From the IMG/VR virus record IMGVR_UViG_3300024259_002152, positions 286,867-350,866 of that record: a DNA stretch of 64,000 nucleotides, one strand, 5' to 3'. Each line of letters begins with the position of its first letter. The stretch's first letter is position 1. Below, piece after piece: positions 26,926 through 48,870 of the stretch. A model generated the notes under the pieces. It did no database searches and had not been told where the DNA came from. It saw only the letters and a program-made list of their open reading frames with translations. A program made the translations under genes and the position numbers.

Positions 26926-26933
26926 GGAATATT

Positions 26934-27239
26934 ATGATAGAATTAATACTAAAAATTCTTTTCAGTATACTTGTAATTGGAGCATTTGTGTGGTCATCCC
27001 TTAAGGCTTATTTCGCCTCTAAAGCATATTTTACACGAATTAACCAAATTCGAATTGAACGACGAAAAGATGCTGAAGAAATAATAGCACAAATAGATGT
27101 TCTTATAAATCAACAAAATGAGATTCTCGAAGAGATAAAAACTCTCAAAACTGAGCAAAACCAATCTCTAAATTTAACAAATATTAATGAGATATATGAG
27201 GAAGCCATTAATGACGACAAAAAAGAAAAAGAAGATTAA
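26934..27239 (+). CDS. TM plus coiled-coil protein
   Basis: GAGG RBS. Confidence 0.65.
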   Translation: MIELILKILFSILVIGAFVWSSLKAYFASKAYFTRINQIRIERRKDAEEIIAQIDVLINQQNEILEEIKTLKTEQNQSLNLTNINEIYEEAINDDKKEKED

Positions 27240-27471
27240 AAACTGTTTAGATTGTAGTTGTCATGAAATTATTGATGATCGAGATCCTCATGACTCGTTT
27301 TGTAGTGATGATATAGCAGTAGTATGCACAATAACCCAAAATCCTAACTGCAAACCAAAATCTAAATATCTAGCAAGTAGAAGTAAATTTCATATAGTAG
27401 CTTGTGCTTGTAGACCTTATAATGCGAAAAAAGAAGCAACAGTGCCCGATTGGTGCCCAAAAAACAAATAA
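27211..27471 (+). CDS. Cys-rich hypothetical protein
   Basis: CxxC...VPDWCP. Confidence 0.65.
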   Translation: MTTKKKKKIKNCLDCSCHEIIDDRDPHDSFCSDDIAVVCTITQNPNCKPKSKYLASRSKFHIVACACRPYNAKKEATVPDWCPKNK

Positions 27472-27481
27472 GGAATTGTCC

Positions 27482-28417
27482 ATGGCAAATGTAGTAATGA
27501 TTGTAGGATATCCCGCAGCAGGAAAATCAGCGATAGCACAAGGATATATAGACCATGGATATACCATTCTAAATAGAGATACAGAGGGAGGAACTATCTC
27601 TGCCCTTGTGCCTAAGATGGTAAAACTTATTAGACAATATACAGACGTTGTCCTAGATAATACTTTCCCTACCAAACAAGTTAGAAAACAATTCATAGAA
27701 GCATGTAAAGATAATAATACTCCTATCTATTGTAATTGGGTTAATTCTTCTATAGAAGAAGCTCAGTTTAATGCCTGTCAAAGAATGATAAAGACAAGGG
27801 GCAAACTTCTCTCTTCAGAAGAGATTAAAAAAGAAAAAAGTCCTAATATGTTCCCTCCTATGGTCCAATTCAAATACCGTAAAGAGTTTGAAGAACCATC
27901 AGAAAAGGAGGGTTTTGGTATGGTGACTATAACAGAATTTGAAAGAAGATTTCCCCCTAATTGGAAGAATAAAGCCCTATTCCTTGACTATGATGGAACA
28001 CTTAGAACTACAAAAAGCGATAAGAAATGGCCTACCAAACCCAATGACATTCAAATACTTCCTAATCGAAGAGCCGTCCTTGATTACTATAAATCTCAAG
28101 GATATATTCTGTTGGGAGTTAGTAATCAATCGGGAATAAGAAAAGATAATCCAACCGAAGAACAAGCAATAGTTTGCTTCGATAAAACTAATACTATGCT
28201 TGGACATAAGATAGATTATAAGTATTGCCCCCATAGACCAGCTCCCATTAGCTGCTATTGTAGAAAACCTATGCCAGGAATGGCAATAGAATTTTTCCAT
28301 AAATATAAACTAGATCCTACTCAGTGCATTATGGTGGGAGATATGACCTCTGATGAAACGTTTGCTAAGAGATCCCATATGCAGTTTGTTCATGCTGATG
28401 AATTTTTTAAGTCATAG
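27482..28417 (+). CDS. polynucleotide kinase / HAD 3'-phosphatase (PNKP-like)
   Basis: GYPAAGKS P-loop, LDNT; DYDGT, SNQSG, RKPMPGM, MVGD. Confidence 0.88.
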   Translation: MANVVMIVGYPAAGKSAIAQGYIDHGYTILNRDTEGGTISALVPKMVKLIRQYTDVVLDNTFPTKQVRKQFIEACKDNNTPIYCNWVNSSIEEAQFNACQRMIKTRGKLLSSEEIKKEKSPNMFPPMVQFKYRKEFEEPSEKEGFGMVTITEFERRFPPNWKNKALFLDYDGTLRTTKSDKKWPTKPNDIQILPNRRAVLDYYKSQGYILLGVSNQSGIRKDNPTEEQAIVCFDKTNTMLGHKIDYKYCPHRPAPISCYCRKPMPGMAIEFFHKYKLDPTQCIMVGDMTSDETFAKRSHMQFVHADEFFKS

Positions 28418-28429
28418 AACGGAGATGAA

Positions 28430-28654
28430 ATGACGACAGGAACAGCCAGAAAGTTTTGGAGTTTAGATGGGTTTGTGGCTATTATCTTTACTATTTTTAC
28501 CATTAGTGCTCTGCTCCGTGGAAGTATCCTAGGTGCCATGTTAATGGGTATATTCTCCTATTGGTGGATAAAAAGAGTATTAGCAAAACCCACGATAATC
28601 AGACGTAGAGGTGGGTATTCTCAGAATCACGGACCAAGGGATTTAGACCTATGA
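28430..28654 (+). CDS. small membrane protein
   Basis: GGAG RBS, two TM. Confidence 0.6.
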   Translation: MTTGTARKFWSLDGFVAIIFTIFTISALLRGSILGAMLMGIFSYWWIKRVLAKPTIIRRRGGYSQNHGPRDLDL

Positions 28655-29295
28655 AAAAACTTGCATCAGATGTAAGAGTCGGAGTAGTTTCAGAAGTGAG
28701 AAGATTCTCTATTTCGGAAAATGGAGCAATTATTTCAAAAGCGAAAGTGAGAGACAACAAAGATGGCAAACCTGTCTATCTGTTTGGTCTTAGAACTAAT
28801 AAATCTCATAGAAGACGATATTGTGCTACAGAACTTTTGAATAGTATTATAAAAACGTATTCTGACAGAGGAATAACCCTAAAGGTATTCTCTGAACATG
28901 GTGGTCCTTCTAACAATACCTTGATGAATATCTATAGGAAGTTTGGATTCAAAAGAAAAGGCAAAACTAACGTTATGTATGTGTCTCCTCCCCGAAAATG
29001 GGAAGAGGGAGATAGAACGAGAATCAAATGCCCTAATTGTGGTAACTGTATGACTATTACTCCTATGCCTTATTATAGATATTATAGAGATGCTAGGGAA
29101 GATATTTGTGAAATAACAAGCGATTATGATCCATGTGCTATGCAATGTAAAAAATGTGAATTGTCATATGCTGGAGGATGCCTTGTAAAATATAAAGGCT
29201 TTTCTACAAACCAATGGTCACCAATACTACCACTTAAAGAATGGATAGATGATATTAACCAAGGGAAAGGTAAGAATAGGAATGGTTATGGCTAA
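28651..29295 (+). CDS. GNAT-like acetyltransferase fused to a zinc ribbon
   Basis: HRRRYCATELL, IYRKFGF, CPNC...CKKC. Confidence 0.6.
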   Translation: MKKLASDVRVGVVSEVRRFSISENGAIISKAKVRDNKDGKPVYLFGLRTNKSHRRRYCATELLNSIIKTYSDRGITLKVFSEHGGPSNNTLMNIYRKFGFKRKGKTNVMYVSPPRKWEEGDRTRIKCPNCGNCMTITPMPYYRYYRDAREDICEITSDYDPCAMQCKKCELSYAGGCLVKYKGFSTNQWSPILPLKEWIDDINQGKGKNRNGYG

Positions 29296-29632
29296 AAAAA
29301 GAGAAATAGTAAAAAGACTCCAAATGATAGACTTTGAGGGAGAAGTGGAGGAAGTGCTATATACTCTTCAATCTCTTGTGGAATCTTATAAAAAGCAAGA
29401 TTATCTCAGATTCCATATCATATATGGATACGGTAATGGCGATGTGAGCGATGAATATTATCTCTTTGGGACAAGATTAGAAACTGATAAAGAATTTGAA
29501 AAACGACTGGCAAAAGAGAAAAAAGAAAGAGCAGCAAAAAAAACCAAGGTAGATAAAAGAAAAAAAGAAGAAGAACAAAAGGAAAAAGAACTATATAAAA
29601 AATTACATGATAAATATAAGGATGTAGTATGA
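29288..29632 (+). CDS. hypothetical protein
   Basis: RLETDKE plus charged coiled coil. Confidence 0.65.
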   Translation: MAKKREIVKRLQMIDFEGEVEEVLYTLQSLVESYKKQDYLRFHIIYGYGNGDVSDEYYLFGTRLETDKEFEKRLAKEKKERAAKKTKVDKRKKEEEQKEKELYKKLHDKYKDVV

Positions 29633-30048
29633 GTCATATATCGGTGCTACTAGAACAATATAGAATAAAACAGATCTACCGATCTAATGCTAATAAAGAG
29701 GATTTGATCCAATGTGGTCGCAATAATCATGTGCCAGAAGATGAACATTTTCAAAAAAATATGTCTCCAGGTCATCCCTCAATGAACGAACTGCTTAAAG
29801 ATAGTTACCCTCGAAGATGCAAACACTGTGGAGTCCTTTTAAGGCCTGAAGAATGGGAACCTATAGACCCAACTTGCCCACATGTAGAACCTATAGACCC
29901 AACTTGCCCACATGTAGAACCCACAAAATCACAATGTATACATGAAAATATAGGATATTATGGGGATAGACAAGGATGCCGATTCCCACAAAAATGTAAA
30001 CATTGCGGAATACTCTTAAAACCCAAAACATGGACAACAAAACATTAA
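29629..30048 (+). CDS. hypothetical protein with CKHCG repeats
   Basis: ATGA overlap. Confidence 0.65.
   Translation: MSHISVLLEQYRIKQIYRSNANKEDLIQCGRNNHVPEDEHFQKNMSPGHPSMNELLKDSYPRRCKHCGVLLRPEEWEPIDPTCPHVEPIDPTCPHVEPTKSQCIHENIGYYGDRQGCRFPQKCKHCGILLKPKTWTTKH
29857..29921 (+). repeat. 30-bp in-frame tandem duplication
   Basis: GAACCTATAGACCCAACTTGCCCACATGTA x2. Confidence 0.9.
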
Positions 30049-30057
30049 GGAGTTGTT

Positions 30058-30366
30058 ATGAAAGTCGTGTTAAAACAAAGTTTCAAAATTGGTACTGATA
30101 TATTGAGATATGTAACGTTATGCAAAGAAATTGATATGCCATTCATGCCACAACTGGGTATATATATAGTAACTAAGCCGTGTTTTGCTGCTCGTCAGGT
30201 GTCTTATGGTACATGGGACGCAGAGACAGAACGGGCAGAGGCATATTTCTGTGAGAAAACATATGGATCTCCTAAAAAGAAACGCAAAGTCCAATTAGCA
30301 GAAACACTGAGATTTGAAGCAGATATTGAAGAATATAAAAAACATGGATGGACAGAAGAAGCATAA
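30058..30366 (+). CDS. hypothetical protein
   Basis: AAGGAG RBS. Confidence 0.65.
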   Translation: MKVVLKQSFKIGTDILRYVTLCKEIDMPFMPQLGIYIVTKPCFAARQVSYGTWDAETERAEAYFCEKTYGSPKKKRKVQLAETLRFEADIEEYKKHGWTEEA

Positions 30367-30369
30367 AAC

Positions 30370-30780
30370 ATGGGTAATATCAATACAATTAAAGATAAAG
30401 ATGGAAATGTAATAGGACAAGCTGATCTTGGACTAGCCTGTTACGCAGTGGTTATAGAGATTATAAAAAAATATAATCCAGATAAGACTATTACATTCCC
30501 AAAACCTGGAGAAATAAATGGGTTACTTGAACCAGCCTATGAAAAAGGAAAAGATTATGAAGTAATACAACTCCAAGTATTTATCAATGATAAATCTACT
30601 TTTACAGAAGAAGATATAGAAGCATTTGAGATGGCTGCTGAAAAATGCTTATCACAAAATGAAGAAAAAGGACCAAAGAGAGTCCTGATTGCCGTAAAAG
30701 AATTGATAGAAAAATATGGCGAAATAACGATGGAATATGTGGCAGTAACCCCTCCAAAAATTACTGTTACGAAGGAATAA
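30370..30780 (+). CDS. hypothetical protein
   Basis: Packed array. Confidence 0.65.
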   Translation: MGNINTIKDKDGNVIGQADLGLACYAVVIEIIKKYNPDKTITFPKPGEINGLLEPAYEKGKDYEVIQLQVFINDKSTFTEEDIEAFEMAAEKCLSQNEEKGPKRVLIAVKELIEKYGEITMEYVAVTPPKITVTKE

Positions 30781-30855
30781 ACAATGAATTATACGTTTAT
30801 ATTAACTAATGGATATATGGAACAACATCATAAATGGTTGTATTGGAAATAGACG

Positions 30856-31743
30856 ATGGAACTAATAGTAGAAACAGATATAGGAAGAGATCCTGATGAT
30901 TTCTTTACCCTCTGCTACCTAATCTCAGCAGGGGTGCAAATAAGGGCTATTACTGTCTCTCCTGGAGATCTAGATCAAGTAGCGGTAGTTAAATTTTTAC
31001 TTAAAGAAGTAGGTCTAACTATACCAGTAGGAGTAGGTAGACTAAATAGAATTAAATCATCAGTAGGAGGAGTTCATACCGAACTACTAAGAAAATATAA
31101 ATTTCCATCTGTTTTTCATGATGATGGTTTCGGACCTATAGTAATAAGAGAAACATTTAATAGATATAGAAATGCAGAACTACTCTGTATAGGACCTCTT
31201 TTGAGCGTAGGAGAATATCTTTCACCTCACTCTTCCCAAAAAATATTCTTTGTTAAAAGAGCAACTATGCAAGGAGGTTTTATAGGATATGATATACATG
31301 GTGTAAAAGTCCCAGAATTAGATAAATTTAAAGGACTTACAACATGCTTAACTTTTAACCTCGGAGGAGATAATGAAGGAGCTATGACGTATATCTCCTC
31401 TAAAATGATTAGAGAACGTAATTGGATAGGAAAAAATATCTGCCATACTATCGAATATGATGAAAATGTTCATAATTTTATCCTGTCCATCAAACCCCAT
31501 GATAGAGCAGGAGAATTATTGAGAGAAGGCATGGGCATGTATCTGGCAAAACATAAATCTAAAAAATTCCATGATCCAACAGCAGCAGTGTGTATGCTTC
31601 ATCCAGAAATAGCTACATGGACAAAAGGTAAAATGTATTATGATAGAGGGAAGTGGGGAGCTACTCTTAATGAAAATGGAGATAATATAGCTATTGATGT
31701 AGATAGATCACAATTATGGAATTTTATCGCGAAAGGAGAATAA
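30856..31743 (+). CDS. nucleoside hydrolase (IU-NH family)
   Basis: ETDIGRDPDD, IGPL, MQGG, FN, FHDP. Confidence 0.85.
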   Translation: MELIVETDIGRDPDDFFTLCYLISAGVQIRAITVSPGDLDQVAVVKFLLKEVGLTIPVGVGRLNRIKSSVGGVHTELLRKYKFPSVFHDDGFGPIVIRETFNRYRNAELLCIGPLLSVGEYLSPHSSQKIFFVKRATMQGGFIGYDIHGVKVPELDKFKGLTTCLTFNLGGDNEGAMTYISSKMIRERNWIGKNICHTIEYDENVHNFILSIKPHDRAGELLREGMGMYLAKHKSKKFHDPTAAVCMLHPEIATWTKGKMYYDRGKWGATLNENGDNIAIDVDRSQLWNFIAKGE

Positions 31744-31744
31744 T

Positions 31745-31927
31745 ATGATCGCCAAATATAAACATTTTGCTACTGCTGATCTATATTCTGCTGCTACTGA
31801 GTTTATTAACCAAATAGGTGAAGAACGATTGATTACTGTTACATCAAATGCCTATCAATCGAATTCTAGCCCAGGAAACCTAAGAAACGGGGAAAAAGTT
31901 ACTGTTTGGTACTGGGGAGAAAAATAA
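31745..31927 (+). CDS. hypothetical protein
   Basis: AAGGAG RBS. Confidence 0.6.
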   Translation: MIAKYKHFATADLYSAATEFINQIGEERLITVTSNAYQSNSSPGNLRNGEKVTVWYWGEK

Positions 31928-31932
31928 ACACC

Positions 31933-32196
31933 ATGAAAAGTCCTAAATGTAGTAAATTAATGAAAAAAAGACATGGAGAAGATCTTCCTAAATTTACTAG
32001 GTGTATCCAATGCTTTTGGAGTTTTATATGCGATGATAAATTCGGGAAAAATACCTTTTGGGACGATACCTTCTGTCATTATAAAAAATCAAGATTCCAA
32101 GAACATGATAAAAAACCCAAAAAATATGTGAGCCATACTAGCTATTGTAATTATCCCAATGATCCGTGTTGTTGCGATTTGAATTATGGCGGATAA
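31933..32196 (+). CDS. Cys-rich hypothetical protein
   Basis: Packed array. Confidence 0.55.
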   Translation: MKSPKCSKLMKKRHGEDLPKFTRCIQCFWSFICDDKFGKNTFWDDTFCHYKKSRFQEHDKKPKKYVSHTSYCNYPNDPCCCDLNYGG

Positions 32197-32219
32197 AATT
32201 ATAGACTAAAGGAGAATCT

Positions 32220-32426
32220 ATGATATTTGGGAAAACATATTCACAACGATTGAGAGAAAGAGATGAGATCAAAGAAAAACAATCAAAAGAAATTAAGTGG
32301 TTTGCCTGGAGACCAGTTGAGTTAAAGGATGGACGAATTGTATGGCTACAATATGTATATCGAACCTATCGATATGGTCGGATCTCAGGGCGGCGGTACT
32401 GGGTATATTCAACTAGAAAAAAATAA
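32220..32426 (+). CDS. hypothetical protein
   Basis: WFAWRPV...VWLQYV phage-type motif. Confidence 0.65.
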   Translation: MIFGKTYSQRLRERDEIKEKQSKEIKWFAWRPVELKDGRIVWLQYVYRTYRYGRISGRRYWVYSTRKK

Positions 32427-32456
32427 ATTATATCTAACTCGAAAGGAAAATAACCT

Positions 32457-32675
32457 ATGATCTTTCTGAAAAAAAAGACAAAAAAAGAATGGACAATTAC
32501 TGCAAAAGAAGCAAAAGCACTAGCCAAAGAACTCGACTATATAGCAGATGAAGCTAATAGTCATAACTGTGCCTATCCCTCAAGAGTAATATTTGCGGGA
32601 GATCCAGATAATCTCAAAATCCCAAAACGTAGAGAATTTAGAATAGTAGCATTGCCAGATCAGGAGGTAGAATGA
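32457..32675 (+). CDS. hypothetical protein
   Basis: AAGGA RBS. Confidence 0.6.
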   Translation: MIFLKKKTKKEWTITAKEAKALAKELDYIADEANSHNCAYPSRVIFAGDPDNLKIPKRREFRIVALPDQEVE

Positions 32676-33088
32676 AAATCATATCAAAAAACACTATTAA
32701 AACAATGGAAGGCTATGAAGATATTCCACTATTCCTCGATGTCTTTAAACTAGAGCCTCAATATGAAGAAGATGAAGAGGGGAAACTGAGATTTAAACCA
32801 AATTCTGTAATAAAATATCTTCTTGATTATCATAAAATACAAACAATGATGACCTGCGAGAGCGGAGGGCTTGCAATTGTATGGGAAGATGCAGAAAAAG
32901 GAGAATATACCCTTAGAGAAATGATCGAACTCTATATCCATATGGGATACTCCCTCTGCGGATTTACAGCGATATTCGGGGAGGCAATGGACAAAGTCCT
33001 AAATATCGAAAGAGATGACGAGGGAGGAGTTATATCTAAATATGGACCAAGCACCATCTCAAAAGAATTTGTAGATCAACCAATCTAA
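32672..33088 (+). CDS. hypothetical protein
   Basis: AGGAGG RBS; LRFKPN...MGYSLCGF. Confidence 0.7.
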   Translation: MKIISKNTIKTMEGYEDIPLFLDVFKLEPQYEEDEEGKLRFKPNSVIKYLLDYHKIQTMMTCESGGLAIVWEDAEKGEYTLREMIELYIHMGYSLCGFTAIFGEAMDKVLNIERDDEGGVISKYGPSTISKEFVDQPI

Positions 33089-33105
33089 TCCTATGGAGAA
33101 TAATA

Positions 33106-33336
33106 ATGAGTATCGAATTTGAATATGAATGTAGAGAAGGAAATCTTAATCCAGAACATAGATTAATCTATCTCTACAGTAGAGTGAATGGGGCAGATAA
33201 AACATTGGGCTATTTATGGATGTCACAAGAAGAATTTGATCGCTTCTGTATTCTTATGGCCAAAGGTAAAGTATTCGAAGAGTTTGAAGAAGCCTTTAGA
33301 GATACTATAAAAGAAAAACTAATCGGAACAGGATAA
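33106..33336 (+). CDS. hypothetical protein
   Basis: GGAG RBS. Confidence 0.6.
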   Translation: MSIEFEYECREGNLNPEHRLIYLYSRVNGADKTLGYLWMSQEEFDRFCILMAKGKVFEEFEEAFRDTIKEKLIGTG

Positions 33337-33340
33337 TTAT

Positions 33341-33526
33341 ATGATAGAACCATCATCCCCTAATATCTCAATGTCTGGAGAATTAACTACCTTCGCAGAA
33401 ACAGCAATGACTATATTTAAGTATGGAATTATAATCTTAGCAATAGTCGTCTGCATATCACTGATTGCTAATTTAATTGGAAAGAGAATAAAAAACGGAG
33501 ATAATGATGAAAATACTAGAAATTGA
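33341..33526 (+). CDS. small membrane protein
   Basis: Single TM. Confidence 0.55.
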   Translation: MIEPSSPNISMSGELTTFAETAMTIFKYGIIILAIVVCISLIANLIGKRIKNGDNDENTRN

Positions 33527-33731
33527 ATATTGTAATTCTTGTCCTTATTTTGAATGCTATTTTCTTGATAGTAAAAATTTTACCCTATTGTGTAAAAAAT
33601 GCACCGAACGCACTATAAAACATTATGATGTAGAGAGTGAAGAATATCAAAATATAATTATGAATCGGGATAAAGTGGCTTCTATTACTCCTCCCGAATG
33701 GTGCCCACTACCAGATAAAATCACTGATTAG
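33504..33731 (+). CDS. Cys-rich hypothetical protein
   Basis: CNSCPY...PEWCPL. Confidence 0.65.
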   Translation: MMKILEIEYCNSCPYFECYFLDSKNFTLLCKKCTERTIKHYDVESEEYQNIIMNRDKVASITPPEWCPLPDKITD

Positions 33732-33765
33732 TAGATTTTTAAACAAATATACCATGGCGATCATG

Positions 33766-33830
33766 GTGGAACAAAGTGGAAAAGAATGGCAATCAGTGGA
33801 AAAAAGTAGAAAAAACCCACTTTTTACTAC
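33766..33830 (+). promoter_or_regulatory. 10-nt periodic GTGG box array (MraZ-operator-like)
   Basis: GTGG/ATGG/GTAG at 33766, 33776, 33786, 33796, 33806; inverted CCAC/CTAC at 33817, 33827. Confidence 0.55.
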
Positions 33831-33838
33831 TTTAACCC

Positions 33839-33866
33839 TTGACAAAACCCAAATACCCCCTATAAT
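33839..33866 (+). promoter_or_regulatory. sigma70-type promoter
   Basis: TTGACA-16-TATAAT. Confidence 0.7.
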
Positions 33867-33923
33867 ACATATTGATTTGTCCAAAATATTTTAATAAATA
33901 AATCTAAAAGAAAGCAACTTATA

Positions 33924-34193
33924 ATGTTCTATGTATGTATAGAAAGAAAAAATAGGGAAAGAACTGTAGCATCATCAGCTACAAGTAAAATTAAACTTGA
34001 TAGAACCCTACAAGCACTAATAATAGAAGGACCAAGGAATGCTGTGACAGAATATACTTCAGAATTTGACTCTGCCTTCTTCACAGAATCAGATGAAATA
34101 GCTATTAACTTCCTACTCAGAAGACCAATCGATACAAGTAAAATTAGAGATAAAATATTTACTCCAAAATGGGAAGAAAGAAAACAAAGATAA
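33924..34193 (+). CDS. hypothetical protein
   Basis: Downstream of promoter. Confidence 0.6.
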   Translation: MFYVCIERKNRERTVASSATSKIKLDRTLQALIIEGPRNAVTEYTSEFDSAFFTESDEIAINFLLRRPIDTSKIRDKIFTPKWEERKQR

Positions 34194-34206
34194 GGAATAA
34201 ATCATT

Positions 34207-34728
34207 ATGTGCTTATCCACTGTAATGACAGATAAAGAAATGAAAAAAGAAGTAGCTACAATACCTAGAGAAGGGATAGTAGTCTATAAAATGGTGCAGG
34301 TAGGTAAAGAAGTATATATGACTGTAATTAAAAACGGAGTAAAAAATTTGGTAGTAGATAATAGATACTATCCAGTATTTTTCGGAAACGATCCGTATAA
34401 AGAAGGGGTAAATAAAGCCTGTACCGAACATAAACCATGGACAAGCCATCAAACACAAACAGATATAATAGATGGAGTAAAATATATAAGAAATGTAACA
34501 TATGAGTCAGGATTTCATTTCTATAAAACAAAATCTGCAGCAAAATCTCACCTAAAAGGACTTACAGAATGTAACACAAGAGATTATTGTCACCCCTGCT
34601 CAAGATATACTGTTATCGAATGTATTGTTAAAAAATCATGGATAACTGCCATAGGAACAGAAAATATTCTAAAACAATCAGAAGATGTTATTGTCGCTAA
34701 AAAAGCAATATTTCCGAAAGCAGCATAA
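34207..34728 (+). CDS. hypothetical protein
   Basis: MCLS...VYK...YESGFH phage-type motif. Confidence 0.7.
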   Translation: MCLSTVMTDKEMKKEVATIPREGIVVYKMVQVGKEVYMTVIKNGVKNLVVDNRYYPVFFGNDPYKEGVNKACTEHKPWTSHQTQTDIIDGVKYIRNVTYESGFHFYKTKSAAKSHLKGLTECNTRDYCHPCSRYTVIECIVKKSWITAIGTENILKQSEDVIVAKKAIFPKAA

Positions 34729-34937
34729 TGCCTGATAAAGAACTATACAATATAATAGATCAATATGGACTACCAAGAGATGAAGTCTCCTGCCCATCAT
34801 GCGGACATCTCTATGGAACTCATAACAGACTAGTCTGCTCGACATGCGAAGAATGCTCCAAATGCTGTCACTGCCCAAAACCTAATCACATCAATCCTGA
34901 TGATTTTGTAGGTAAATATTTATTATCAGAAGAATAA
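34728..34937 (+). CDS. Cys-rich zinc-finger protein
   Basis: CPSC...CSTCEECSKCCHC. Confidence 0.65.
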   Translation: MPDKELYNIIDQYGLPRDEVSCPSCGHLYGTHNRLVCSTCEECSKCCHCPKPNHINPDDFVGKYLLSEE

Positions 34938-34938
34938 T

Positions 34939-35433
34939 ATGTTCTACCAAAACCAAAAAAATATAAATACTATAGGGTGGTTGTTGATTGTAATAAACCT
35001 CCTCATAACAATATCTATAGGAATGAAATTTGGAATTATCTTTATTCTCCCTGTTCTAATAGGTATTATTATAACTGTTCTTGTATATAAGAAAAATACT
35101 AAAATTGGTAATATCCTCTGCACAAATTGTAAATACTTCAAAATCTCAACTATAGATACACTTTCAGAATGCTTAGCCCCCGAAAATACTAAAATAGATG
35201 ATACTTCACTAGGAACTATGAAAGTAAAAACAAAAATACAAATACAAACTAATGAAAATTTAAATGAAAATAATGACTGTAAATTCTATAAATATGATTG
35301 CAGCCTTTATGCAATAGATGAAGAACATGCGTCAGAAATATGCTGGGAAACAGGAGCAATATTTACAGTAATAACTATTTTTCTAACTTTTATTGCTCTG
35401 ACTATAAGATTAGTATTCGTAATGCCAAAATAA
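34939..35433 (+). CDS. membrane protein with Cys motif
   Basis: TM segments, CTNCKY. Confidence 0.65.
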   Translation: MFYQNQKNINTIGWLLIVINLLITISIGMKFGIIFILPVLIGIIITVLVYKKNTKIGNILCTNCKYFKISTIDTLSECLAPENTKIDDTSLGTMKVKTKIQIQTNENLNENNDCKFYKYDCSLYAIDEEHASEICWETGAIFTVITIFLTFIALTIRLVFVMPK

Positions 35434-35593
35434 ATAATAAGGAATAATACTATGAAACTACTCGATAAATTCGAAAAACACTGGCATAAATATGAAAAAA
35501 TCTATAACAAAGCTTTCTGGATATTTATTATATCTATACTTGCAATTATTGCCATAGGATGGATAGGTATATTTATTTAAATCGCGGAGAAAA

Positions 35594-36403
35594 ATGATGA
35601 ACCCTACCCCCTCAAATGATCTTCCAGAAAATGCTCAAGCATATGGGAAAAGAATCGGACAAAATTTTGTTAAAAAATTTGATGCGAAAGAACAATCCTA
35701 TAACCTTAATGCAAGAGGACTACAAACAGGTAAAGCAGCTACTGCTATAGCAGAAATGTTATACCAATGCTATAAAAAAGAACAAGAAACAAACTGCGGA
35801 GAATTACTGAATAAATGGATAGCTGAACACCTGTGGGCAATTATACTACTAGACTATATGCCTAAACTACAAAAAATATGGCAATATCTATATGATAATA
35901 AATATAATAAAAGTCATACTCTGCCCTATGGAGATGCAGATGGAAATATATGGGTAGAATACCCTAAACAAATATCTAAATGGACAGATAATAGAAAAAT
36001 CCTTATACATACCTCTCATTGCACTATGGCCGATGATAATACTCATATCTTTATGATGGATAAAGATAGTGCTCTAAATACCCTAGAAATTAGAACTGTA
36101 TGGCCAAGACAAAATCTTAAAGGCGGATATAAAGTAGAAAAATCAGAAGAATATCCAAATGGATGGTTCTCGTGGGGAGATGATAGAGATGTTAAAATAC
36201 CTTCTCTGCAAACCTATAGAGATAGAAATTTCGAATATGGATACCATGATGCAACAGATAAAGGATATGTCGTAACTCTACAAACTATTGGAGAACCAAA
36301 AGCAAAAAGAGCAGATATATATCAACAAGAAATACAACATGCCGTATGGCTTATTAATATTATGGAAAATGTCATAGAAGATAAAGTCAATACTAAACCC
36401 TAA
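35594..36403 (+). CDS. hypothetical protein
   Basis: GGAG RBS, 269 aa. Confidence 0.75.
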   Translation: MMNPTPSNDLPENAQAYGKRIGQNFVKKFDAKEQSYNLNARGLQTGKAATAIAEMLYQCYKKEQETNCGELLNKWIAEHLWAIILLDYMPKLQKIWQYLYDNKYNKSHTLPYGDADGNIWVEYPKQISKWTDNRKILIHTSHCTMADDNTHIFMMDKDSALNTLEIRTVWPRQNLKGGYKVEKSEEYPNGWFSWGDDRDVKIPSLQTYRDRNFEYGYHDATDKGYVVTLQTIGEPKAKRADIYQQEIQHAVWLINIMENVIEDKVNTKP

Positions 36404-36613
36404 CTAATTTCGCGGAAAATAATGTAAACCCAAACTACTACTAAAATGAATATATTCACTAACCTAATAGAAGCATTCGATAAAGCATGGAAACATCTAT
36501 CTAATACTAATAAAGTAATAATAACTACTCTACTTATTATACAAGCTATAAATGGACTACAAATAATCATAAGTATAATAAAATACATAACTTATAGTAT
36601 ATTATGATAGGAA

Positions 36614-36982
36614 ATGATAATGGAAGTAAATGAATCACTATACCCTAAGGCAGTATGTATCTTCTGTGAGCATTGTGTAGATGAAGAAGGAGATGAAGAA
36701 TTTGTCTTTCAATCAGATTGTGATACCTATCTATGTAAAAAACATCCCACTCAAAGAACTATTCATCCTGTTACTGGAAAACCTTGCTATGCCTTTCAAC
36801 ATGAAGAACATATAGAATGGAATGTAGGAAGTAAATATAAATTATGTATACATGTTAATCATGATGGACAATGCTCACATTTCTCCAAAATAGGAGAAAA
36901 AGAACAAAAAGAAAGGAAATTGTCAGTAGGTGAGCAAGAAGAAGTAGTAGAAGTAGAAGAAGTAGAAGAAGGAAATATATAG
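36614..36982 (+). CDS. Cys-rich hypothetical protein
   Basis: CIFCEH...HPVTG...NHDGQC. Confidence 0.65.
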   Translation: MIMEVNESLYPKAVCIFCEHCVDEEGDEEFVFQSDCDTYLCKKHPTQRTIHPVTGKPCYAFQHEEHIEWNVGSKYKLCIHVNHDGQCSHFSKIGEKEQKERKLSVGEQEEVVEVEEVEEGNI

Positions 36983-36998
36983 TGTTCCACGTGGAACA
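36983..36998. promoter_or_regulatory. parS: parS centromere-like site
   Basis: Perfect 16-bp palindrome TGTTCCACGTGGAACA matching the bacterial chromosomal parS consensus. Confidence 0.85.
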
Positions 36999-37252
36999 AT
37001 TGTAGTAGGTTATAGGAAAAATGGAAATTCCTGGCACCAAAATAGGAAATTCATTATATCAATTTTTTGGTTCTATATAGAAAAATTAGCGTTTCATTAC
37101 ACTAAAATTTTTGGTTCTCGGTGGACCTTTAAAAAATGGATCAAAAATTCCCCAAAAAATAATAGATTTTTTTATTAAAATTTTCAATAAAGGAGAAATA
37201 AATTGTCTGGAAAATCGATAGTGTCGATAAATTCCAGACCACGAGAAAACAC

Positions 37253-37281
37253 TTGCAAAAGTGATTAGTAAATGGTAAAAT
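37253..37281 (+). promoter_or_regulatory. sigma70-type promoter between two inverted-repeat pairs
   Basis: TTGCAA-17-TAAAAT. Confidence 0.55.
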
Positions 37282-37382
37282 AGAGAAGAATCGATAGTCT
37301 GGAAAAAATAGGAGCAAAAATAATTCCAGACAAGTATTTTACCATCACCCCTTGATTTCCCCCTAGGAGAAAGGTTTTTGAG

Positions 37383-38102
37383 ATGATTGAGATTATGTAC
37401 TCACCAGAAGATGTAGGCAAAGAAGTTAAAAATAGTCATGGAAAACATACAATAATTAGAAAATACCATATGACAGAAAAAGAAAAGGAGATAGCACGAA
37501 ATAAGTGGTTAGTAATAACAGCAAAAATAAATAAAAGAATAGTTAAGCAAGCAGGAGATTTATTTTATAATCCATACCGAAAGGGAGTATATTACTATCA
37601 GATCTATTCTATGTTCTTATTAGGAGCTAATAAATGGCATAGTTTAAATGCTGTCCTAAAGAAGATGGAAAGTATTATGTCAAAGATAGTAGTTAAAAAA
37701 GATGGATATCAGATAACAGCATGGGACAAATTTCGAGGTAAGGGTAGCAGAGACAGTGCTATCAGATGTAAAGATTTTGTTGGCAGGGTGCAGGAGAATA
37801 TGGTATTCTTTCAACGTCTTACTAGACTACATCCTTATGGTTATAAGCTATGGCAGGTTGGTTCTGCTGTAGATATTAAGAGAGTAAGTAGAAGAGGGTT
37901 TGTAAGTGGTTGTTATTACTACAGGTTATCTACTTATGGCACATCAAAAGAAGCATTACCTATAAGAGATTATAGAGAATTTAACTTTCCTCAGCATGAG
38001 AGGAAATATGTTAGTTATAAGTTCATTGGGACTGTTATCACTAAAGATAAAGTCATAACTGAAGGGAAAATAAATGAGATGTCACAAATGCAATCAGGAT
38101 AG
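37383..38102 (+). CDS. basic hypothetical protein next to the candidate origin
   Basis: 239 aa, K/R/Y rich. Confidence 0.75.
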   Translation: MIEIMYSPEDVGKEVKNSHGKHTIIRKYHMTEKEKEIARNKWLVITAKINKRIVKQAGDLFYNPYRKGVYYYQIYSMFLLGANKWHSLNAVLKKMESIMSKIVVKKDGYQITAWDKFRGKGSRDSAIRCKDFVGRVQENMVFFQRLTRLHPYGYKLWQVGSAVDIKRVSRRGFVSGCYYYRLSTYGTSKEALPIRDYREFNFPQHERKYVSYKFIGTVITKDKVITEGKINEMSQMQSG

Positions 38103-38640
38103 TATAAAGATTGATAATGGACATATTATTTGTGAGATATGTGGTTTAGATATAGATGTTAGTTCTTTAGAAGATCCATTATTTGATTTATTCTTCTATA
38201 ATGAAAATTTGCAAGAAGCAGAGAAGTTAGGTAAGGAGTCGTATATAGAGGGTAAGGACATGGGAGATAATCCTTATTCTATTGCTTCTGATCAGCTTAT
38301 GCTTAATAAGAGGTGGGAGGCAGGTTATAGCACCGAAAGGGATATAGAGGAAAAAGAGGCATTATTAATTTCTGCCGAAAATTTAAAAAATGTCCTTGAA
38401 AAACTAGAAAAACTACAAACTGCTATAAAAGAGAAGGAACAAGTCTCTGATCAGACCATAGAAGAACTAAGAGAAGGTAATTCTATTCTCGTAGAAAGAA
38501 TAGATAATCTTAATTCTCTTTGTGTTAATTTAGAGAAGATAGTTAAAAGAGTTAAGATACTAGAAAAGACAAAATATCTCCTTCCTGGGCGATACAGGAG
38601 GGAAATAGCTAAGATTACGATAAAAATTCCAGACAAGTGA
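38074..38640 (+). CDS. zinc-ribbon plus coiled-coil protein
   Basis: CHKC...CEICG; NPY...WEAGY. Confidence 0.7.
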   Translation: MRCHKCNQDSIKIDNGHIICEICGLDIDVSSLEDPLFDLFFYNENLQEAEKLGKESYIEGKDMGDNPYSIASDQLMLNKRWEAGYSTERDIEEKEALLISAENLKNVLEKLEKLQTAIKEKEQVSDQTIEELREGNSILVERIDNLNSLCVNLEKIVKRVKILEKTKYLLPGRYRREIAKITIKIPDK

Positions 38641-38697
38641 TTTTTTATAATGGTATAATGTGGCAATAGTAAAAGCAGTTATATTAGGAGAAAAATC

Positions 38698-39198: not shown

Positions 39199-39231
39199 AT
39201 TCCAGACAATGAGTTTTAGTTAACAGTAGGT

Positions 39232-40242
39232 ATGGAAACTACAATGACTATTGAAGTAAAAAAATTATCGGACATGGATGCTGCTCCTATTCGTAGAAAT
39301 AGGACTTGGTTTAATGACATTGATATCATCTACGGATACAGTCAGTTCCCAGACTATTTGGAATGGGGAATGCCAAAGGGTAAGATCAGCTTATGGGCAG
39401 GAACTGCTGGAGTAGGTAAAAGTCGTCTTTGTATCGATGTTGCTAAGAATTTTAGCACTCGTTATGAGAATGGTAGAGTTCTTTATTTCCAAACAGAATC
39501 GACTATGGAAGATTTTGCTGGATGGGCAAAGGATACTAAGAAGTATGATAATATTGAGTGTTGTGGGGCTAGTGCGATAGAAGATATTATCGATGTTATT
39601 TATCTTAAGAAACCCAAGCTAGTTTTTATTGATAGTGTTAATGAAATTGATGAATTTGAGAATGGTAATAAAAGAGAGGCTCGAAGACTTATTAAGGGAG
39701 AGAATAGTAAGCCAGGATTGAAAAAAGCAGCTAATGATGTTGGTTGTCATATTATTTTGTTAGGTCAAATAAATCAAGATGGCAAGACTATTAAGGGTGG
39801 TACATCTTTACCTCACTTAGTAGATATAGCATTGCATCTTCGTTCCTTATCTCCTGAGGAGGTAAAGGGTTATGTAGGAGAAGCATTATCGGGAATGTTT
39901 AGGATGTCGGTAGGTGAGAAGCATAGACATGGTTCTAAGGAGAATTTTGCTTGGTTCCAGCATCATGATAATGGGGTTAGGCAGTGGTCGATTCGTTCTA
40001 ATGAGAATATTAAATGGCAAGAGACTTTTCATGATGCTCCACCACCTCCGCCTCCTATTGAGCCAGGGCATAATATTGATGGGACTTGGGACCAAAGCTC
40101 TCCTGAGTTTAGAGCTTCATGTGAGGCATATAAGAGAAGTCCTGAGGGTCAGAAATTGATTAGACAGTGGTATAAAGATCATAGTCCTACTGCTTATCAG
40201 AAGATAGGAAACTTCTTTGATGAGATATTTAATAAGAAGTAA
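39232..40242 (+). CDS. RadA/Sms-like RecA-fold ATPase
   Basis: GTAGVGKS, LYFQTE, FIDSVN, GQINQDG, HLVD. Confidence 0.8.
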   Translation: METTMTIEVKKLSDMDAAPIRRNRTWFNDIDIIYGYSQFPDYLEWGMPKGKISLWAGTAGVGKSRLCIDVAKNFSTRYENGRVLYFQTESTMEDFAGWAKDTKKYDNIECCGASAIEDIIDVIYLKKPKLVFIDSVNEIDEFENGNKREARRLIKGENSKPGLKKAANDVGCHIILLGQINQDGKTIKGGTSLPHLVDIALHLRSLSPEEVKGYVGEALSGMFRMSVGEKHRHGSKENFAWFQHHDNGVRQWSIRSNENIKWQETFHDAPPPPPPIEPGHNIDGTWDQSSPEFRASCEAYKRSPEGQKLIRQWYKDHSPTAYQKIGNFFDEIFNKK

Positions 40243-45463: not shown

Positions 45464-45540
45464 TTTTTTCCAGACAACGCATTTCTCGAAATGATTATAT
45501 GTAGCACCGAATAAGTTATTTCTTATAGGAGATTTGTTCA

Positions 45541-45795
45541 ATGTTTTTTGCAATAAAATTAGCTCTTATGTTGGTATGGTTGGGTATGGGAGCATTTGGT
45601 TATCATATCTCTTATGAATACCAAATACATCTTTATAGGAGAAAATGGAGTAATAATCAAAATCTCATTCACCTATTAAGAGTGCTCTTAGGTCCTATTA
45701 ATTGGGTTTGGTGTTATTTGACAAGAAAAGGAGAAATGACTTACTGGGCAGATTATCAAAGATCTTCTGCATATGACCATAGGAAAGAAGAGTAG
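45541..45795 (+). CDS. small membrane protein
   Basis: AGGAG RBS, N-terminal TM. Confidence 0.65.
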   Translation: MFFAIKLALMLVWLGMGAFGYHISYEYQIHLYRRKWSNNQNLIHLLRVLLGPINWVWCYLTRKGEMTYWADYQRSSAYDHRKEE

Positions 45796-45800
45796 TTTTT

Positions 45801-45874
45801 AGGTCCATAGCTCAGCTAGGTAGAGCATCTGGCTTTTAACCAGAGAGTCGTGGGTTCGATTCCCACTGGACCTA
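45801..45874 (+). tRNA. tRNA-Lys(TTT)
   Basis: Loop CTTTTAA. Confidence 0.94.
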
Positions 45875-45881
45875 TTAGAGA

Positions 45882-45956
45882 GGGGATGAAGCTTATTGTG
45901 GTAAAGCACCAGGTTCTTACCCTGGGTTCTTGAGAGTTCGAATCTCTCTATCCCCA
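45882..45956 (+). tRNA. tRNA-Lys(CTT)
   Basis: Loop TTCTTAC. Confidence 0.87.
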
Positions 45957-45959
45957 TTC

Positions 45960-46092
45960 AAGGTGGCAGCATGGTAAAGCTGGAATTGACGACACGGCTG
46001 ACGCGAGGGAACCCCTCGATGCGTGGAGATCGACACCCACTTAGATATATGGCTTACCACTGTGTATTGAAAAAGTCAATTCTTTCCGCCTT
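45960..46092 (+). ncRNA. unknown multi-helix structured RNA
   Basis: AAGGTGG/CCGCCTT, GAATTGAC/GTCAATTC, internal hairpins. Confidence 0.55.
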
Positions 46093-46096
46093 TTAT

Positions 46097-46168
46097 GTCA
46101 GAGGTAGTGTAATGGAAGCACACAAGATTGTGGATCTTGGAGAGCGAGTTCAAATCTCGTCCTTTGAC
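46097..46168 (+). tRNA. tRNA-His(GTG)
   Basis: Loop TTGTGGA, G-1:C73. Confidence 0.9.
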
Positions 46169-46174
46169 CTTTTT

Positions 46175-46246
46175 GAGCAAGTAGCCAAGCGGCCAAGGCA
46201 ATAGGTTGCAACCCTATGATCGTGGGTCCGAGTCCCACCTTGCTCT
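46175..46246 (+). tRNA. tRNA-Cys(GCA)
   Basis: Loop TTGCAAC, U73. Confidence 0.9.
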
Positions 46247-46439
46247 TTTTCCAGACAATGAGTTTCTTAGAATGGTATAGTAGACAAGGGCGTATTAGTC
46301 CTTTTGTTGAGCAGATGCTTAACTACCCATATTAATGTCGTAATTATAATCGACAGAAGGAGTTAGGTGATTTGCTCAACATTTATTTTATCACAAAAAG
46401 TATAGTAAAATTTGTGACATTTTGTCGGAAAAATAAAAA

Positions 46440-46943
46440 ATGACTAGCGAAGAAATAAAAATAGCCAATAAGACAGCCAGAAGTGGTGGAGCAGTAGGTA
46501 AAAATGCTATTCTTCCTAGGATCATAAAAGCTAGATATTCTCCTGTAAGTTGTGAGATTCTAGATTTTGGAGCGGGACCTAAAGCTCTACATACTCTAGA
46601 GTTAGATAAAAACAACTTTCGGTGTTGGCCTTATGAGATGGGAGATAATTATGATTCTGATATCCATTTTAATGATAAAGAGTTAGGTGATCGGCAATTT
46701 GACCTAGTTTTTGCTTCTAATGTCATCAATACTCTGAGTTCTTTATCTGCTATTCGAGAGACTCTAGATAAGATCTATAGTTTTGTAGATACTTATGGAG
46801 TAGCGTTGATTAATCTTCCTGTTTCTCCGAGAAAATATAAAGGTCTCACCAAAGAGTTACTTATGGATCTTATTATGGAGAAATTTAATTCGGTAATGGT
46901 AGAGAACCACAATGGGACTAAGGTATTTTTTTGTGAGAAGTAA
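46440..46943 (+). CDS. class I SAM-dependent methyltransferase
   Basis: ILDFGAG, FDLVFASNVIN. Confidence 0.75.
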   Translation: MTSEEIKIANKTARSGGAVGKNAILPRIIKARYSPVSCEILDFGAGPKALHTLELDKNNFRCWPYEMGDNYDSDIHFNDKELGDRQFDLVFASNVINTLSSLSAIRETLDKIYSFVDTYGVALINLPVSPRKYKGLTKELLMDLIMEKFNSVMVENHNGTKVFFCEK

Positions 46944-46948
46944 TAGTT

Positions 46949-47690: not shown

Positions 47691-47717
47691 ATGTAAACCT
47701 TTTGTTGTAGGAGAATT

Positions 47718-47897: not shown

Positions 47898-47912
47898 TTT
47901 AAGCGGGTGTAA

Positions 47913-48862: not shown

Positions 48863-48870
48863 GATTTTTT

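What the first reader, a model, noticed from the sequence alone, without database searches (positions are those of the whole stretch)
36999..37380. Candidate origin: skew switch plus two identically spaced inverted pairs of the genome-wide motif
Seen: genes are on the + strand on both sides, yet composition flips (hand counts: 36421-36480 has C12/G5; 37861-37920 has C3/G18). The gap holds AATTTTT(T)GGTTCT twice and A/T tracts. It also holds GTCTGGAA-N19-TTCCAGAC twice (37205-37239 and 37297-37331), bracketing a sigma70-like promoter. These are the only intergenic reverse copies of the motif I found. Inference: a bidirectional origin where the factor that reads TTCCAGAC binds head to head. The adjacent basic 239 aa protein (37383) is a candidate initiator or autoregulated factor.
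Basis: partly seen in the sequence, partly recalled or inferred. Interest (0 to 1): 0.65.

Follow-up and report, generated by a model that had tools for sequence, protein, structure and literature searches.

The report
Self-regulated promoter switch, not shown origin
The gap is most likely the control region of a huge marine phage's own promoter-recognition factor: a host-type promoter held between two operators built from the same 8-base word that marks about 20 phage promoters, and nothing tested here shows a replication origin.

Summary
The window is the last 64 kb of a 351-kb phage contig whose cumulative GC skew rises without any extremum. A complete 548-kb relative shows none at this locus either.

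TTCCAGAC is not genome-wide. 23 of 25 forward copies lie in the last 66 kb. Each sits at about -39 to -32 of a promoter-like unit, with TGnTAnnnT 19 nt downstream.

The two inverted pairs flank a sigma70-type promoter for a conserved 239-aa protein. This protein has a predicted winged-helix fold and no Pfam or PDB relative.

In 39 distinct relatives the two palindromes lie 92±1 bp apart around the same promoter. The half-site differs between phages, and in at least 12 variants it equals that phage's own dispersed promoter word.

Best reading: operators for an autoregulated, MotA-like (by function) promoter-specificity factor, at the boundary between two transcription regimes.

The local composition flip is real, lies at synonymous sites, and was seen in all 14 related loci that could be tested. 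Its cause is unresolved, so an origin cannot be fully excluded.

The parts
17036..36982 (+). Block of small + strand ORFs without TTCCAGAC promoters. Its synonymous-site composition drifts: GC3 skew falls from 0.27 to -0.25 and AT3 skew rises to +0.19 towards its right end.
   Evidence: The same pattern is seen in G002 and in 14/14 related loci. A 12/12 sigma70 consensus lies at 33839-33866.
36983..36998 (.). Perfect 16-nt palindrome TGTTCCACGTGGAACA directly after the stop codon of the last block gene. It has no U tail on the + strand.
37061..37118 (+). Two copies of AATTTTT(T)GGTTCT, 44 nt apart. The second copy abuts the conserved element.
37117..37184 (.). Conserved A-tract-rich element of about 65 nt (family consensus aTCGAynnAtCT..aTAAaa.GGa..AAAAaT..AAAAaTAATAgAttTt). 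Function unknown. Conservation starts sharply at its left edge.
   Evidence: Alignment of 29 relatives. No consensus RNA fold on the - strand. Several independent contigs start at its first bases.
37205..37239 (.). Operator 1: GTCTGGAA-N19-TTCCAGAC, centred at about -66 from the predicted start site. The outer-left copy keeps the 10-nt core TTCCAGACAA.
37253..37281 (+). Sigma70-type promoter TTGCAA-N17-TAAAAT with TG at 37273-37274. The predicted start site is near 37288.
   Evidence: The equivalent promoter in 39 relatives has a median 10/12 match, and 29/39 have TG. It belongs to the contig-wide class TTGaAAGTGA..TATAAT.
37297..37331 (.). Operator 2: GTCTGGAA-N19-TTCCAGAC, centred at about +27, 92 bp from operator 1.
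37383..38102 (+). Gene of the 239-aa conserved protein (P0001), the candidate factor that reads the TTCCAGAC word.
38074..38640 (+). 188-aa protein with an N-terminal CxxC..CxxC zinc ribbon. It overlaps the end of P0001 and keeps its position in relatives.
38627..38659 (+). TTCCAGAC promoter unit upstream of the 166-aa gene.
39200..39232 (+). TTCCAGAC promoter unit upstream of the RadA/KaiC-like ATPase gene (39232-40242).
6136..17060 (+). Seven TTCCAGAC promoter units, at 6136, 9369, 13742, 14164, 14412, 15061 and 17028. They lie ahead of the DNA methyltransferase, helicase and DndB-like genes.
45468..62725 (+). Eleven TTCCAGAC promoter units, at 45468, 46249, 50719, 51236, 52155, 55843, 56742, 58161, 60613, 61900 and 62693. 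They lie ahead of tRNA clusters and the HATPase, SPFH and PARP-like genes.

Best explanation
The gap is the control region of an early regulatory gene.

Proposed mechanism:
1. Host RNA polymerase starts at a sigma70-type promoter (37253-37281) and makes the 239-aa protein P0001.
2. P0001, or less likely another phage factor, recognises the word TTCCAGAC(AA).
3. At about 20 sites in this window the word sits at -39 to -30, in place of a -35 box. It lies 17 nt upstream of an extended -10 (TGnTAnnnT). There the factor would recruit or re-aim host polymerase. The genes switched on include tRNA clusters, DNA methyltransferases and PARP-, DndB- and SPFH-like genes.
4. At its own promoter the word occurs as two inverted pairs, centred at about -66 and +27 and 92 bp apart. 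Bound factor there would most plausibly shut the promoter off, possibly by looping. This gives negative autoregulation and an early-to-middle switch.

The locus is also the border between a promoter-word-free block of small early-type genes on the left and the word-rich regulon on the right. That border would account for the abrupt change in strand composition.

Shown here: the sequence architecture, its conservation, the covariation, the promoter-like anatomy and the predicted fold.

For: 1. Promoter anatomy. The 20 dispersed copies share TTCCAGACAA, G at +11, TTT at +14-16 and TAnnnT at +27. TAnnnT at that offset is found in 13/25 copies (G000) and 29/41 copies (G002), against a 3% background. 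Copies lie 32-90 nt before a start codon in most cases, and often directly after a stop codon, terminator or tRNA.
2. Rigid architecture. In 39 distinct relatives the palindrome centres are 92±1 bp apart. The -35 box starts about 13 nt after palindrome 1 and the -10 box ends about 14 nt before palindrome 2.
3. Covariation. The half-site changes between phages: TTCCAGAC, ATCCAGAC, AACCAGTC, TTCCAGGTA, TTCCAGGC, TACCAGA, TTCCAGAG, TTCCCAGAG, TCTAGAC, TTACCAGAC, AAAACCAG and others. In each case it equals that phage's own dispersed promoter word.
4. Regulon layout. In G000, G001 and G002 the word is absent for 14-30 kb upstream of the locus and dense for 25-40 kb downstream.
5. The protein. P0001 is always the first gene after the operators. 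Its model is confident (pLDDT 87.5). Nearly all of the top 50 structural matches are winged-helix DNA-binding domains.
6. No phage RNA polymerase gene was found in the contig.
Against: - No experiment or transcript data support the model. Start sites are only predicted.
- The winged-helix matches are weak (Z 4-5.2).
- Covariation between P0001 residues and half-site class reduces to essentially one clade (4 changes, sign test p=1).
- The contig encodes two sigma factors, one SigH-like and one ECF-like. Either could read the word instead.
- The homodimer prediction gave no verdict.
- Half-site centres 27 bp apart lie on different helix faces, which is unusual for a simple dimer.
- The model does not by itself explain the conserved 65-nt upstream element.
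- It does not explain why composition in the left block goes slightly beyond neutral.
Confidence: 0.6

Rival explanations
1. Replication origin, possibly in addition to the regulatory role. The factor would bind the inverted pairs as an initiator. Leftward leading-strand synthesis or an R-loop starting here would give the left block its reversed strand composition.
For: - Local sawtooth at synonymous sites. GC3 and AT3 skew drift towards reversed values over 15-30 kb and reset exactly at the locus in G000 and G002.
- AT3 skew flips sign in 14/14 related loci.
- At 4-fold sites A and T are nearly swapped: A .51/T .31 upstream against A .33/T .49 downstream.
- Intergenic DNA in the block shifts in the same direction.
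- The gap holds A-tracts and a conserved non-coding element.
- Winged-helix matches include Orc1/Cdc6 and, weakly, Rep3 initiators (TM 0.34).
- From my own knowledge: T4 oriF/oriG use activator-dependent middle promoters, and DnaA is both initiator and autoregulated transcription factor.
Against: - There is no cumulative skew extremum in 351 kb or at this locus in the complete 548-kb relative. In that relative the extrema coincide with gene-strand switches at about 445 and 500 kb.
- The reversed signal fades within 15-30 kb instead of running to a terminus.
- There are no tandem iterons. The dispersed copies carry -10 boxes at a fixed distance, as promoters do.
- DnaB is 220 kb away and the local ATPase is RadA/KaiC-like.
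Confidence: 0.12
2. The word is the -35 element of a phage-encoded sigma factor (the SigH-like or the ECF-like one). The palindromes would be sites for some other protein, or decoy sites for holoenzyme, and P0001 would have another role.
For: - The contig has two sigma-family genes.
- The word lies where a -35 box would be.
- Lineage-specific words need a co-evolving phage reader, and a sigma factor could be one.
Against: - The -10 part is TGnTAnnnT, typical of primary sigma factors (my own knowledge), and is shared with the host-type promoter in the gap.
- From my own knowledge: free sigma factors do not normally bind paired inverted sites.
- The palindromes are tied in position to the P0001 gene in dozens of lineages, not to the sigma genes.
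Confidence: 0.12
3. Genome terminus or packaging start, or another physical DNA end, at the left edge of the conserved element (about 37120).
For: - About 25 of 80 metagenomic contigs carrying the gene begin 155-300 nt upstream of it.
- About ten begin within a few bases of the same homologous position.
- One same-phage contig from another assembly begins at 37120.
Against: - The locus is internal in 351-, 298- and 548-kb contigs.
- Contigs of three independent runs cross it.
- Three same-phage contigs also share an end at 38556, inside a gene. Recurrent break points therefore arise from assembly branching among co-occurring relatives.
- Conservation between phages begins exactly at that edge, which by itself predicts graph branching there.
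Confidence: 0.05

Closest known systems
T4 middle promoters with the MotA activator and AsiA (sigma appropriation)
   Same: A phage-specific box replaces the -35 element while a sigma70-type -10 is kept, often with TGn. Tens of promoters are spread over early and middle genes. The activator is made early from a host-type promoter (PMC2988021).
   Different: - The MotA box is centred at -30, 12±1 bp from the -10. Here the 10-nt core ends 17 nt from the -10, centred at about -35.
- P0001 has no sequence match to any solved structure. Its fold matches are winged-helix domains rather than MotA.
- No AsiA-like partner was identified.
- I know of no paired operators flanking the motA promoter.
Iteron-plasmid initiators of the Rep3 type (RepE, pPS10 RepA, pi). 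Recalled from my own knowledge.
   Same: A winged-helix protein whose own promoter is repressed through an inverted repeat. That repeat shares an 8-bp word with single-orientation sites used for its other function.
   Different: - The single-orientation sites here are dispersed promoters with -10 boxes, not tandem iterons at an origin.
- Structural similarity is weak (TM 0.34).
- There is no sequence relationship.
Phage phi29 protein p4 switch at promoters A2c/A2b/A3. Recalled from my own knowledge.
   Same: A small phage regulator binds inverted repeats with a long spacer, arranged in pairs around early promoters. It represses early promoters and activates later ones.
   Different: p4 acts at one compact region together with p6, not at a regulon of 20-55 promoters. 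No homology was tested or expected.
Repression loops such as lac O1-O3 (about 92 bp apart), and DnaA autoregulation. Recalled from my own knowledge.
   Same: Two operators about 92 bp apart enclose a promoter. In the DnaA case, one protein serves both dispersed sites and its own promoter.
   Different: Looping is untested here. The half-site layout (8-mers 19 nt apart) is unlike lac operators.

Membership tests
Bidirectional replication origin defined by skew | Extremum of cumulative GC (or AT) skew for the replicon at the site | tested here: not met
   Cumulative skew is monotone over 350,866 bp. In the complete 547,943-bp relative the locus (360.7 kb) is not an extremum; the extrema lie at the gene-strand switches near 445 and 500 kb. 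Only a local step at synonymous sites exists.
Bidirectional replication origin defined by skew | Clustered iterons or initiator boxes next to an unwinding element | tested here: inconclusive
   A-tracts and one 14-nt direct repeat pair are present. The word occurs as two inverted pairs, not as tandem repeats. No known box was sought beyond this.
Bidirectional replication origin defined by skew | Origin activity (depth maximum, bubble, nascent strands) | not testable with these tools
   Only assembled contigs of the runs were available, with no raw reads.
T4 MotA-type middle promoter system | Promoters have a phage box in place of the -35 plus a sigma70-type -10 | tested here: met
   Position matrix of 20 sites. 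TAnnnT at a fixed offset in 13/25 and 29/41 copies against 3% background.
T4 MotA-type middle promoter system | Activator homologous to MotA (N-terminal domain plus double-wing C-terminal domain) | tested here: not met
   No Pfam, PHROG or NCBIfam hit. No PDB sequence hit, even with profiles. MotA is absent from the fold-search lists.
T4 MotA-type middle promoter system | Anti-sigma co-activator (AsiA) | not tested
   No candidate was examined. The 188-aa zinc-ribbon and 166-aa neighbours remain uncharacterised.
Rep3-type initiators | Tandem WH1-WH2 fold with Rep3 sequence signature | tested here: inconclusive
   One Atlas row with Rep3_N/Rep3_C at TM 0.34/0.31. No Pfam Rep_3 hit in P0001 or in 51 distant relatives.
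Rep3-type initiators | Tandem iterons forming an origin beside the gene | tested here: not met
   No tandem copies. The single copies are 0.1-6 kb apart, each with its own -10 box.
Autoregulated transcription factor with flanking operators | Inverted repeats of the factor's site positioned around its own promoter, conserved and co-varying with its other sites | tested here: met
   92±1 bp in 39 relatives; covariation in at least 12 half-site variants.
Autoregulated transcription factor with flanking operators | The encoded protein binds those sites | not testable with these tools
   There is only a predicted winged-helix fold. The residue-versus-site association is confounded by phylogeny.

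The most novel reading that the evidence does not exclude
The P0001 family would be dual-function, DnaA-like proteins of huge phages. The same winged-helix protein would switch on a regulon through single sites. Through the paired inverted sites and the conserved A-tract element, it would also fire leftward DNA synthesis (or a long leftward transcript) from this locus. That activity would write the conserved sawtooth of reversed strand composition into the 15-30 kb to its left.
Probability: 0.1. Interest if true: 0.85.

Novelty: new variant of a known kind. Interest (0 to 1): 0.58.

Why it matters
Huge phages of 300-550 kb from seawater and sediments are uncultivated, and their gene-expression programmes are unknown. 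This locus gives three testable handles.

1. It defines a class of 20-55 promoters per genome, with their likely master regulator and its feedback circuit, from sequence alone.
2. The regulator belongs to a family with no Pfam or PDB relative. There are 277 cluster representatives at 50% identity. Its site specificity has diversified into at least a dozen variants together with the promoters. This is a natural set of potentially orthogonal factor-promoter pairs and a system for studying how specificity co-evolves.
3. The abrupt, conserved change in synonymous-site strand composition at the locus marks a boundary. It is either a boundary of transcription regime or a site where DNA or RNA synthesis starts, and read-depth or 5'-end data could tell which.

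For the scan itself, the lesson is that in one-strand phage genomes a local skew step marks a boundary between gene blocks. It is not sufficient evidence for an origin.

Tried and rejected
- Search of the phage nucleotide collection found nothing. A single-protein scan of the viral collection also found nothing.
- Pfam, PHROGs and NCBIfam on P0001 gave no hit. Pfam on 52 distant family members gave nothing real.
- PDB profile searches gave nothing.
- Foldseek against PDB and BFVD gave nothing at E<=0.001. The feature search of the ESM Atlas gave no usable hit.
- P0001 homodimer prediction gave no verdict, so it counts neither for nor against.
- P0001 residues 147, 152 and 165 track the base after CCAG, but the non-A types form essentially one clade (4 changes on the tree, sign test p=1). 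This is not evidence for contact.
- The conserved upstream element, read on the - strand, gave no predicted pairs, so a structured leftward RNA is not supported. Rfam gave only a chance miRNA row below threshold. The 5' leader is not unusually stable (z -0.5).
- A leftward promoter of the TTCCAGAC class was considered. The outer-left copy keeps the extended core, but a -10 box at the right distance is not conserved in relatives, and the distance to the conserved element varies. A leftward TTGAAA-N17-TATTAT exists in this phage only.
- tRNA-driven codon choice was considered as the sole cause of the composition flip. It fits the rise of G-ending Lys and Glu codons, for which the phage carries CUU and CUC tRNAs. 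It does not fit the A/T swap at 4-fold sites, because the phage tRNAs there are UNN. It also does not fit the shift in intergenic DNA or the 'normal' composition of the early P0001 gene.
- The mis-join idea is rejected by contigs of three runs that cross the gap.

Full report
**What the window is.** The window is bases 286,867-350,866 of a 350,866-bp virus contig, rated 73% complete by CheckV. Almost all open reading frames lie on the + strand along the whole contig. The window carries 31 tRNA genes. It also carries DNA methyltransferases, a helicase, and DndB-, SPFH- and PARP-like genes. No phage RNA polymerase gene was found. Two sigma-family genes lie further upstream in the contig.

**Check of the observation.**
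- The base counts are exact.
- The 14-nt repeat occurs twice.
- The two GTCTGGAA-N19-TTCCAGAC pairs are at 37205-37239 and 37297-37331. None occurred in 100 shuffles, and they are unique in the contig.
- They bracket TTGCAA-N17-TAAAAT, which is preceded by TG.

Two statements need correcting.
- TTCCAGAC is strongly over-represented (24 copies against 1.9 expected). However, 23 of the 25 forward copies in the contig lie in its last 66 kb. It is a regional word, not a genome-wide one.
- GC skew is positive in every 5-kb bin and the cumulative curve never turns.

**What the word is.** The 20 dispersed forward copies align over about 45 nt. The shared features are an A-rich lead, an invariant TTCCAGACAA, G at +11, TTT at +14-16, then TG and TAnnnT starting at +27. 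If TAnnnT is a -10 box, the word occupies -39 to -30. TAnnnT at that offset occurs in 13 of 25 copies here and in 29 of 41 copies in a relative, against a background of 3%. Most copies sit 32-90 nt before a start codon. Many follow directly after a stop codon, a terminator hairpin or a tRNA. This is promoter anatomy, with a phage-specific box in place of the -35 element. A second, contig-wide class looks like a plain strong sigma70 promoter: TTGAAAGTGAAAG, nine or so bases, then TATAAT. The promoter in the gap (TTGCAAAAGTGA...TGGTAAAAT) is of that second kind.

**Comparative evidence.** The 239-aa protein encoded just after the gap (P0001) has more than 200 metagenomic relatives at 53-77% identity. 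A wider family has 277 cluster representatives. Gene order is kept: many small ORFs, a gap, this gene, two small genes, then a RecA-fold ATPase.

I collected 80 further loci, plus 298-kb and 548-kb phage contigs. In 39 distinct relatives there are two palindromes whose centres are 92±1 bp apart. Between them is a sigma70-type promoter with a median 10 of 12 matches, and TG is present in 29 of the 39. The -35 box begins about 13 nt after the first palindrome, and the -10 box ends about 14 nt before the second.

The half-site is not constant. Depending on the phage it reads TTCCAGAC, ATCCAGAC, AACCAGTC, TTCCAGGTA, TTCCAGGC, TACCAGA, TTCCAGAG, TTCCCAGAG, TCTAGAC, TTACCAGAC or AAAACCAG. In every lineage with enough flanking DNA, that same variant is the word found in front of downstream genes, with the same TTT and TAnnnT spacing. 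Operators and promoters therefore co-evolve, which means a single lineage-specific reader serves both.

In all three long contigs the word is absent for 14-30 kb upstream of the locus and dense for 25-40 kb downstream.

**The protein.** P0001 has no Pfam, PHROG or NCBIfam match. Neither do 51 distant relatives. Profiles find nothing in the PDB. With a 40-sequence alignment the model is confident (pLDDT 87.5, pTM 0.85). Foldseek finds nothing significant.

The exhaustive aligner returns a list made up almost wholly of winged-helix DNA-binding domains. These include Orc1/Cdc6, Fur, forkhead, histone H1/H5, OmpR/PhoB, AfsR and TFE, all at Z 4-5.2. That is weak but consistent support for a DNA-binding fold. 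It does not separate a transcription factor from an initiator.

My attempt to tie particular residues to the variable bases of the half-site failed for phylogenetic reasons. The dimer prediction gave no verdict.

**The composition flip.**
- At third codon positions the block to the left (about 19-37 kb in the window) drifts from GC3 skew 0.27 to -0.25, and from AT3 skew near 0 to +0.19.
- At the locus both values jump to +0.47 and -0.17. No other part of the 351-kb contig behaves like this.
- The complete 548-kb relative shows the same ramp and reset. In both genomes the ramp begins just after the last upstream word-bearing promoter.
- AT3 skew is positive upstream and negative downstream in all 14 related loci where both sides could be measured.
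- In pooled codons, 4-fold sites are A .51/T .31 upstream against A .33/T .49 downstream. G-ending Lys, Glu and Gln codons are .16 against .45.
- Intergenic DNA in the block shifts the same way.

The effect is therefore regional and at least partly mutational.

My preferred reading is that the block is a separate, briefly expressed early unit. Most of the genome acquires a transcription-linked asymmetry because it is transcribed from replicating DNA, and this block lacks it. Phage tRNAs for G-ending codons would add a selective component. Leftward DNA or RNA synthesis starting at the locus would also produce a sawtooth, and I cannot exclude it.

**Origin and terminus.**
- There is no extremum here.
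- In the complete relative, skew simply follows gene strand. Its turning points are at about 445 and 500 kb, not at the locus at 360.7 kb.
- The true DnaB-type helicase lies at 104 kb.
- The local ATPase is RadA/KaiC-like.

The contig is not mis-joined. Contigs from three independent runs cross the gap.

Many metagenomic contigs start 155-300 nt upstream of the gene. About ten begin at the same homologous base at the left edge of a conserved 65-nt A-tract element. This could indicate a physical DNA end. However, same-phage contigs also share a break inside a gene at 38556, and inter-phage conservation starts exactly at that edge. Assembly branching among co-occurring relatives is therefore the simpler explanation. 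Raw reads were not available.

**Mechanism.** The proposed sequence of events is as follows.
1. Host polymerase uses the sigma70-type promoter.
2. P0001 accumulates and binds single words at about 20 promoters, switching them on.
3. P0001 also binds the two inverted pairs, at about -66 and +27 of its own promoter, and turns it down.

The architecture, covariation and fold are shown here.

**Relation to known systems.**
- In function it is closest to T4 MotA-dependent middle promoters (PMC2988021). The box position differs, and the protein is not a MotA relative.
- In circuit logic it resembles Rep3-type initiators and DnaA, where one protein serves dispersed sites plus an inverted-repeat operator at its own gene. 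It also resembles the phi29 p4 switch. These comparisons come from my own knowledge.
- I class it as a new variant of a known kind.

Noticed in passing
window 37117-37184, and the homologous stretch in L043-L120: A 65-nt non-coding element (aTCGAynnAtCT..TAAAAyGGA..AAAAaTAATAgAttTt) is conserved across phages whose P0001 proteins are only about 50% identical. Conservation starts abruptly at its left edge. No function could be assigned and there is no consensus RNA fold.
   Followed up: partly
L042-L118 (contig starts); window 37120, 37132, 38556: About 25 of 80 metagenomic contigs begin 155-300 nt upstream of the P0001 gene, and about ten begin at the same homologous base. Same-phage contigs from other assemblies start at 37120, and three end at 38556. 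This is either assembly branching or physical DNA ends, and was not resolved without raw reads.
   Followed up: partly
G000 whole contig, e.g. window 657, 18022, 40302; genome 10554, 268967: A second promoter class, cTTGAAAGTGAAAGt followed by about 9 nt and TATAAT, is spread over the whole 351-kb contig. There are 34 copies of AGTGAAAG, most of them 26-130 nt before a start codon.
   Followed up: partly
G000:C1 about 225.5 kb (L009:1342-2076) and 266.8 kb (L010:1465-2016), outside the window: Two phage-encoded sigma-70 family proteins: a SigH-like one of 244 aa (E 6e-24) and an ECF-like one of 183 aa.
   Followed up: partly
window 41039-51150: 31 tRNA genes, including pairs for A- and G-ending Lys, Glu, Arg and Leu codons. 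There is one odd call with a two-base anticodon (42263-42338) and unusually long tRNA-Met (44013-44103) and tRNA-Ser (42717-42813) calls. An HNH endonuclease gene (41534-42070) sits within the array.
   Followed up: no
window 58404-59735; 15654-16988; 54419-55756: A PARP catalytic plus regulatory domain protein, a DndB-like protein and an SPFH/Band-7 protein, all downstream of TTCCAGAC promoters. They are possible counter-defence genes.
   Followed up: no
window 36925-36971: A GAA/GTA-rich repeat encodes an acidic tail on the Cys-rich 122-aa protein. The same 35-40 nt is shared by several unrelated contigs in the seawater runs, which inflates the summed depth in that bin.
   Followed up: no
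window 37352-37374 and relatives (just before the ATG): A short pairing (C-rich tract or CTTT against GAAAGG) overlaps the ribosome-binding site of the P0001 gene in this phage and many relatives. It may be a translational control hairpin.
   Followed up: no
L003:9195-9500: In one relative (TACCAGA type), a second cluster of forward and reverse half-sites lies about 3 kb downstream of the P0001 gene. This suggests a second operator-like region.
   Followed up: no
L130:2585-2650: A distant family member (about 36% identity) has two TTGCGAA-N19-TTCGCAA palindromes and the conserved A-tract element. They lie 350-800 nt upstream of the gene and do not bracket the nearest promoter.
   Followed up: no
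G002 (L013-L040), 445-500 kb in gene orientation: This is the only stretch of opposite-strand genes in the complete 548-kb relative. GC skew turns negative there. Its right border near 500 kb is the only local minimum of cumulative skew, which makes it a better skew-based origin candidate than the locus studied.
   Followed up: no
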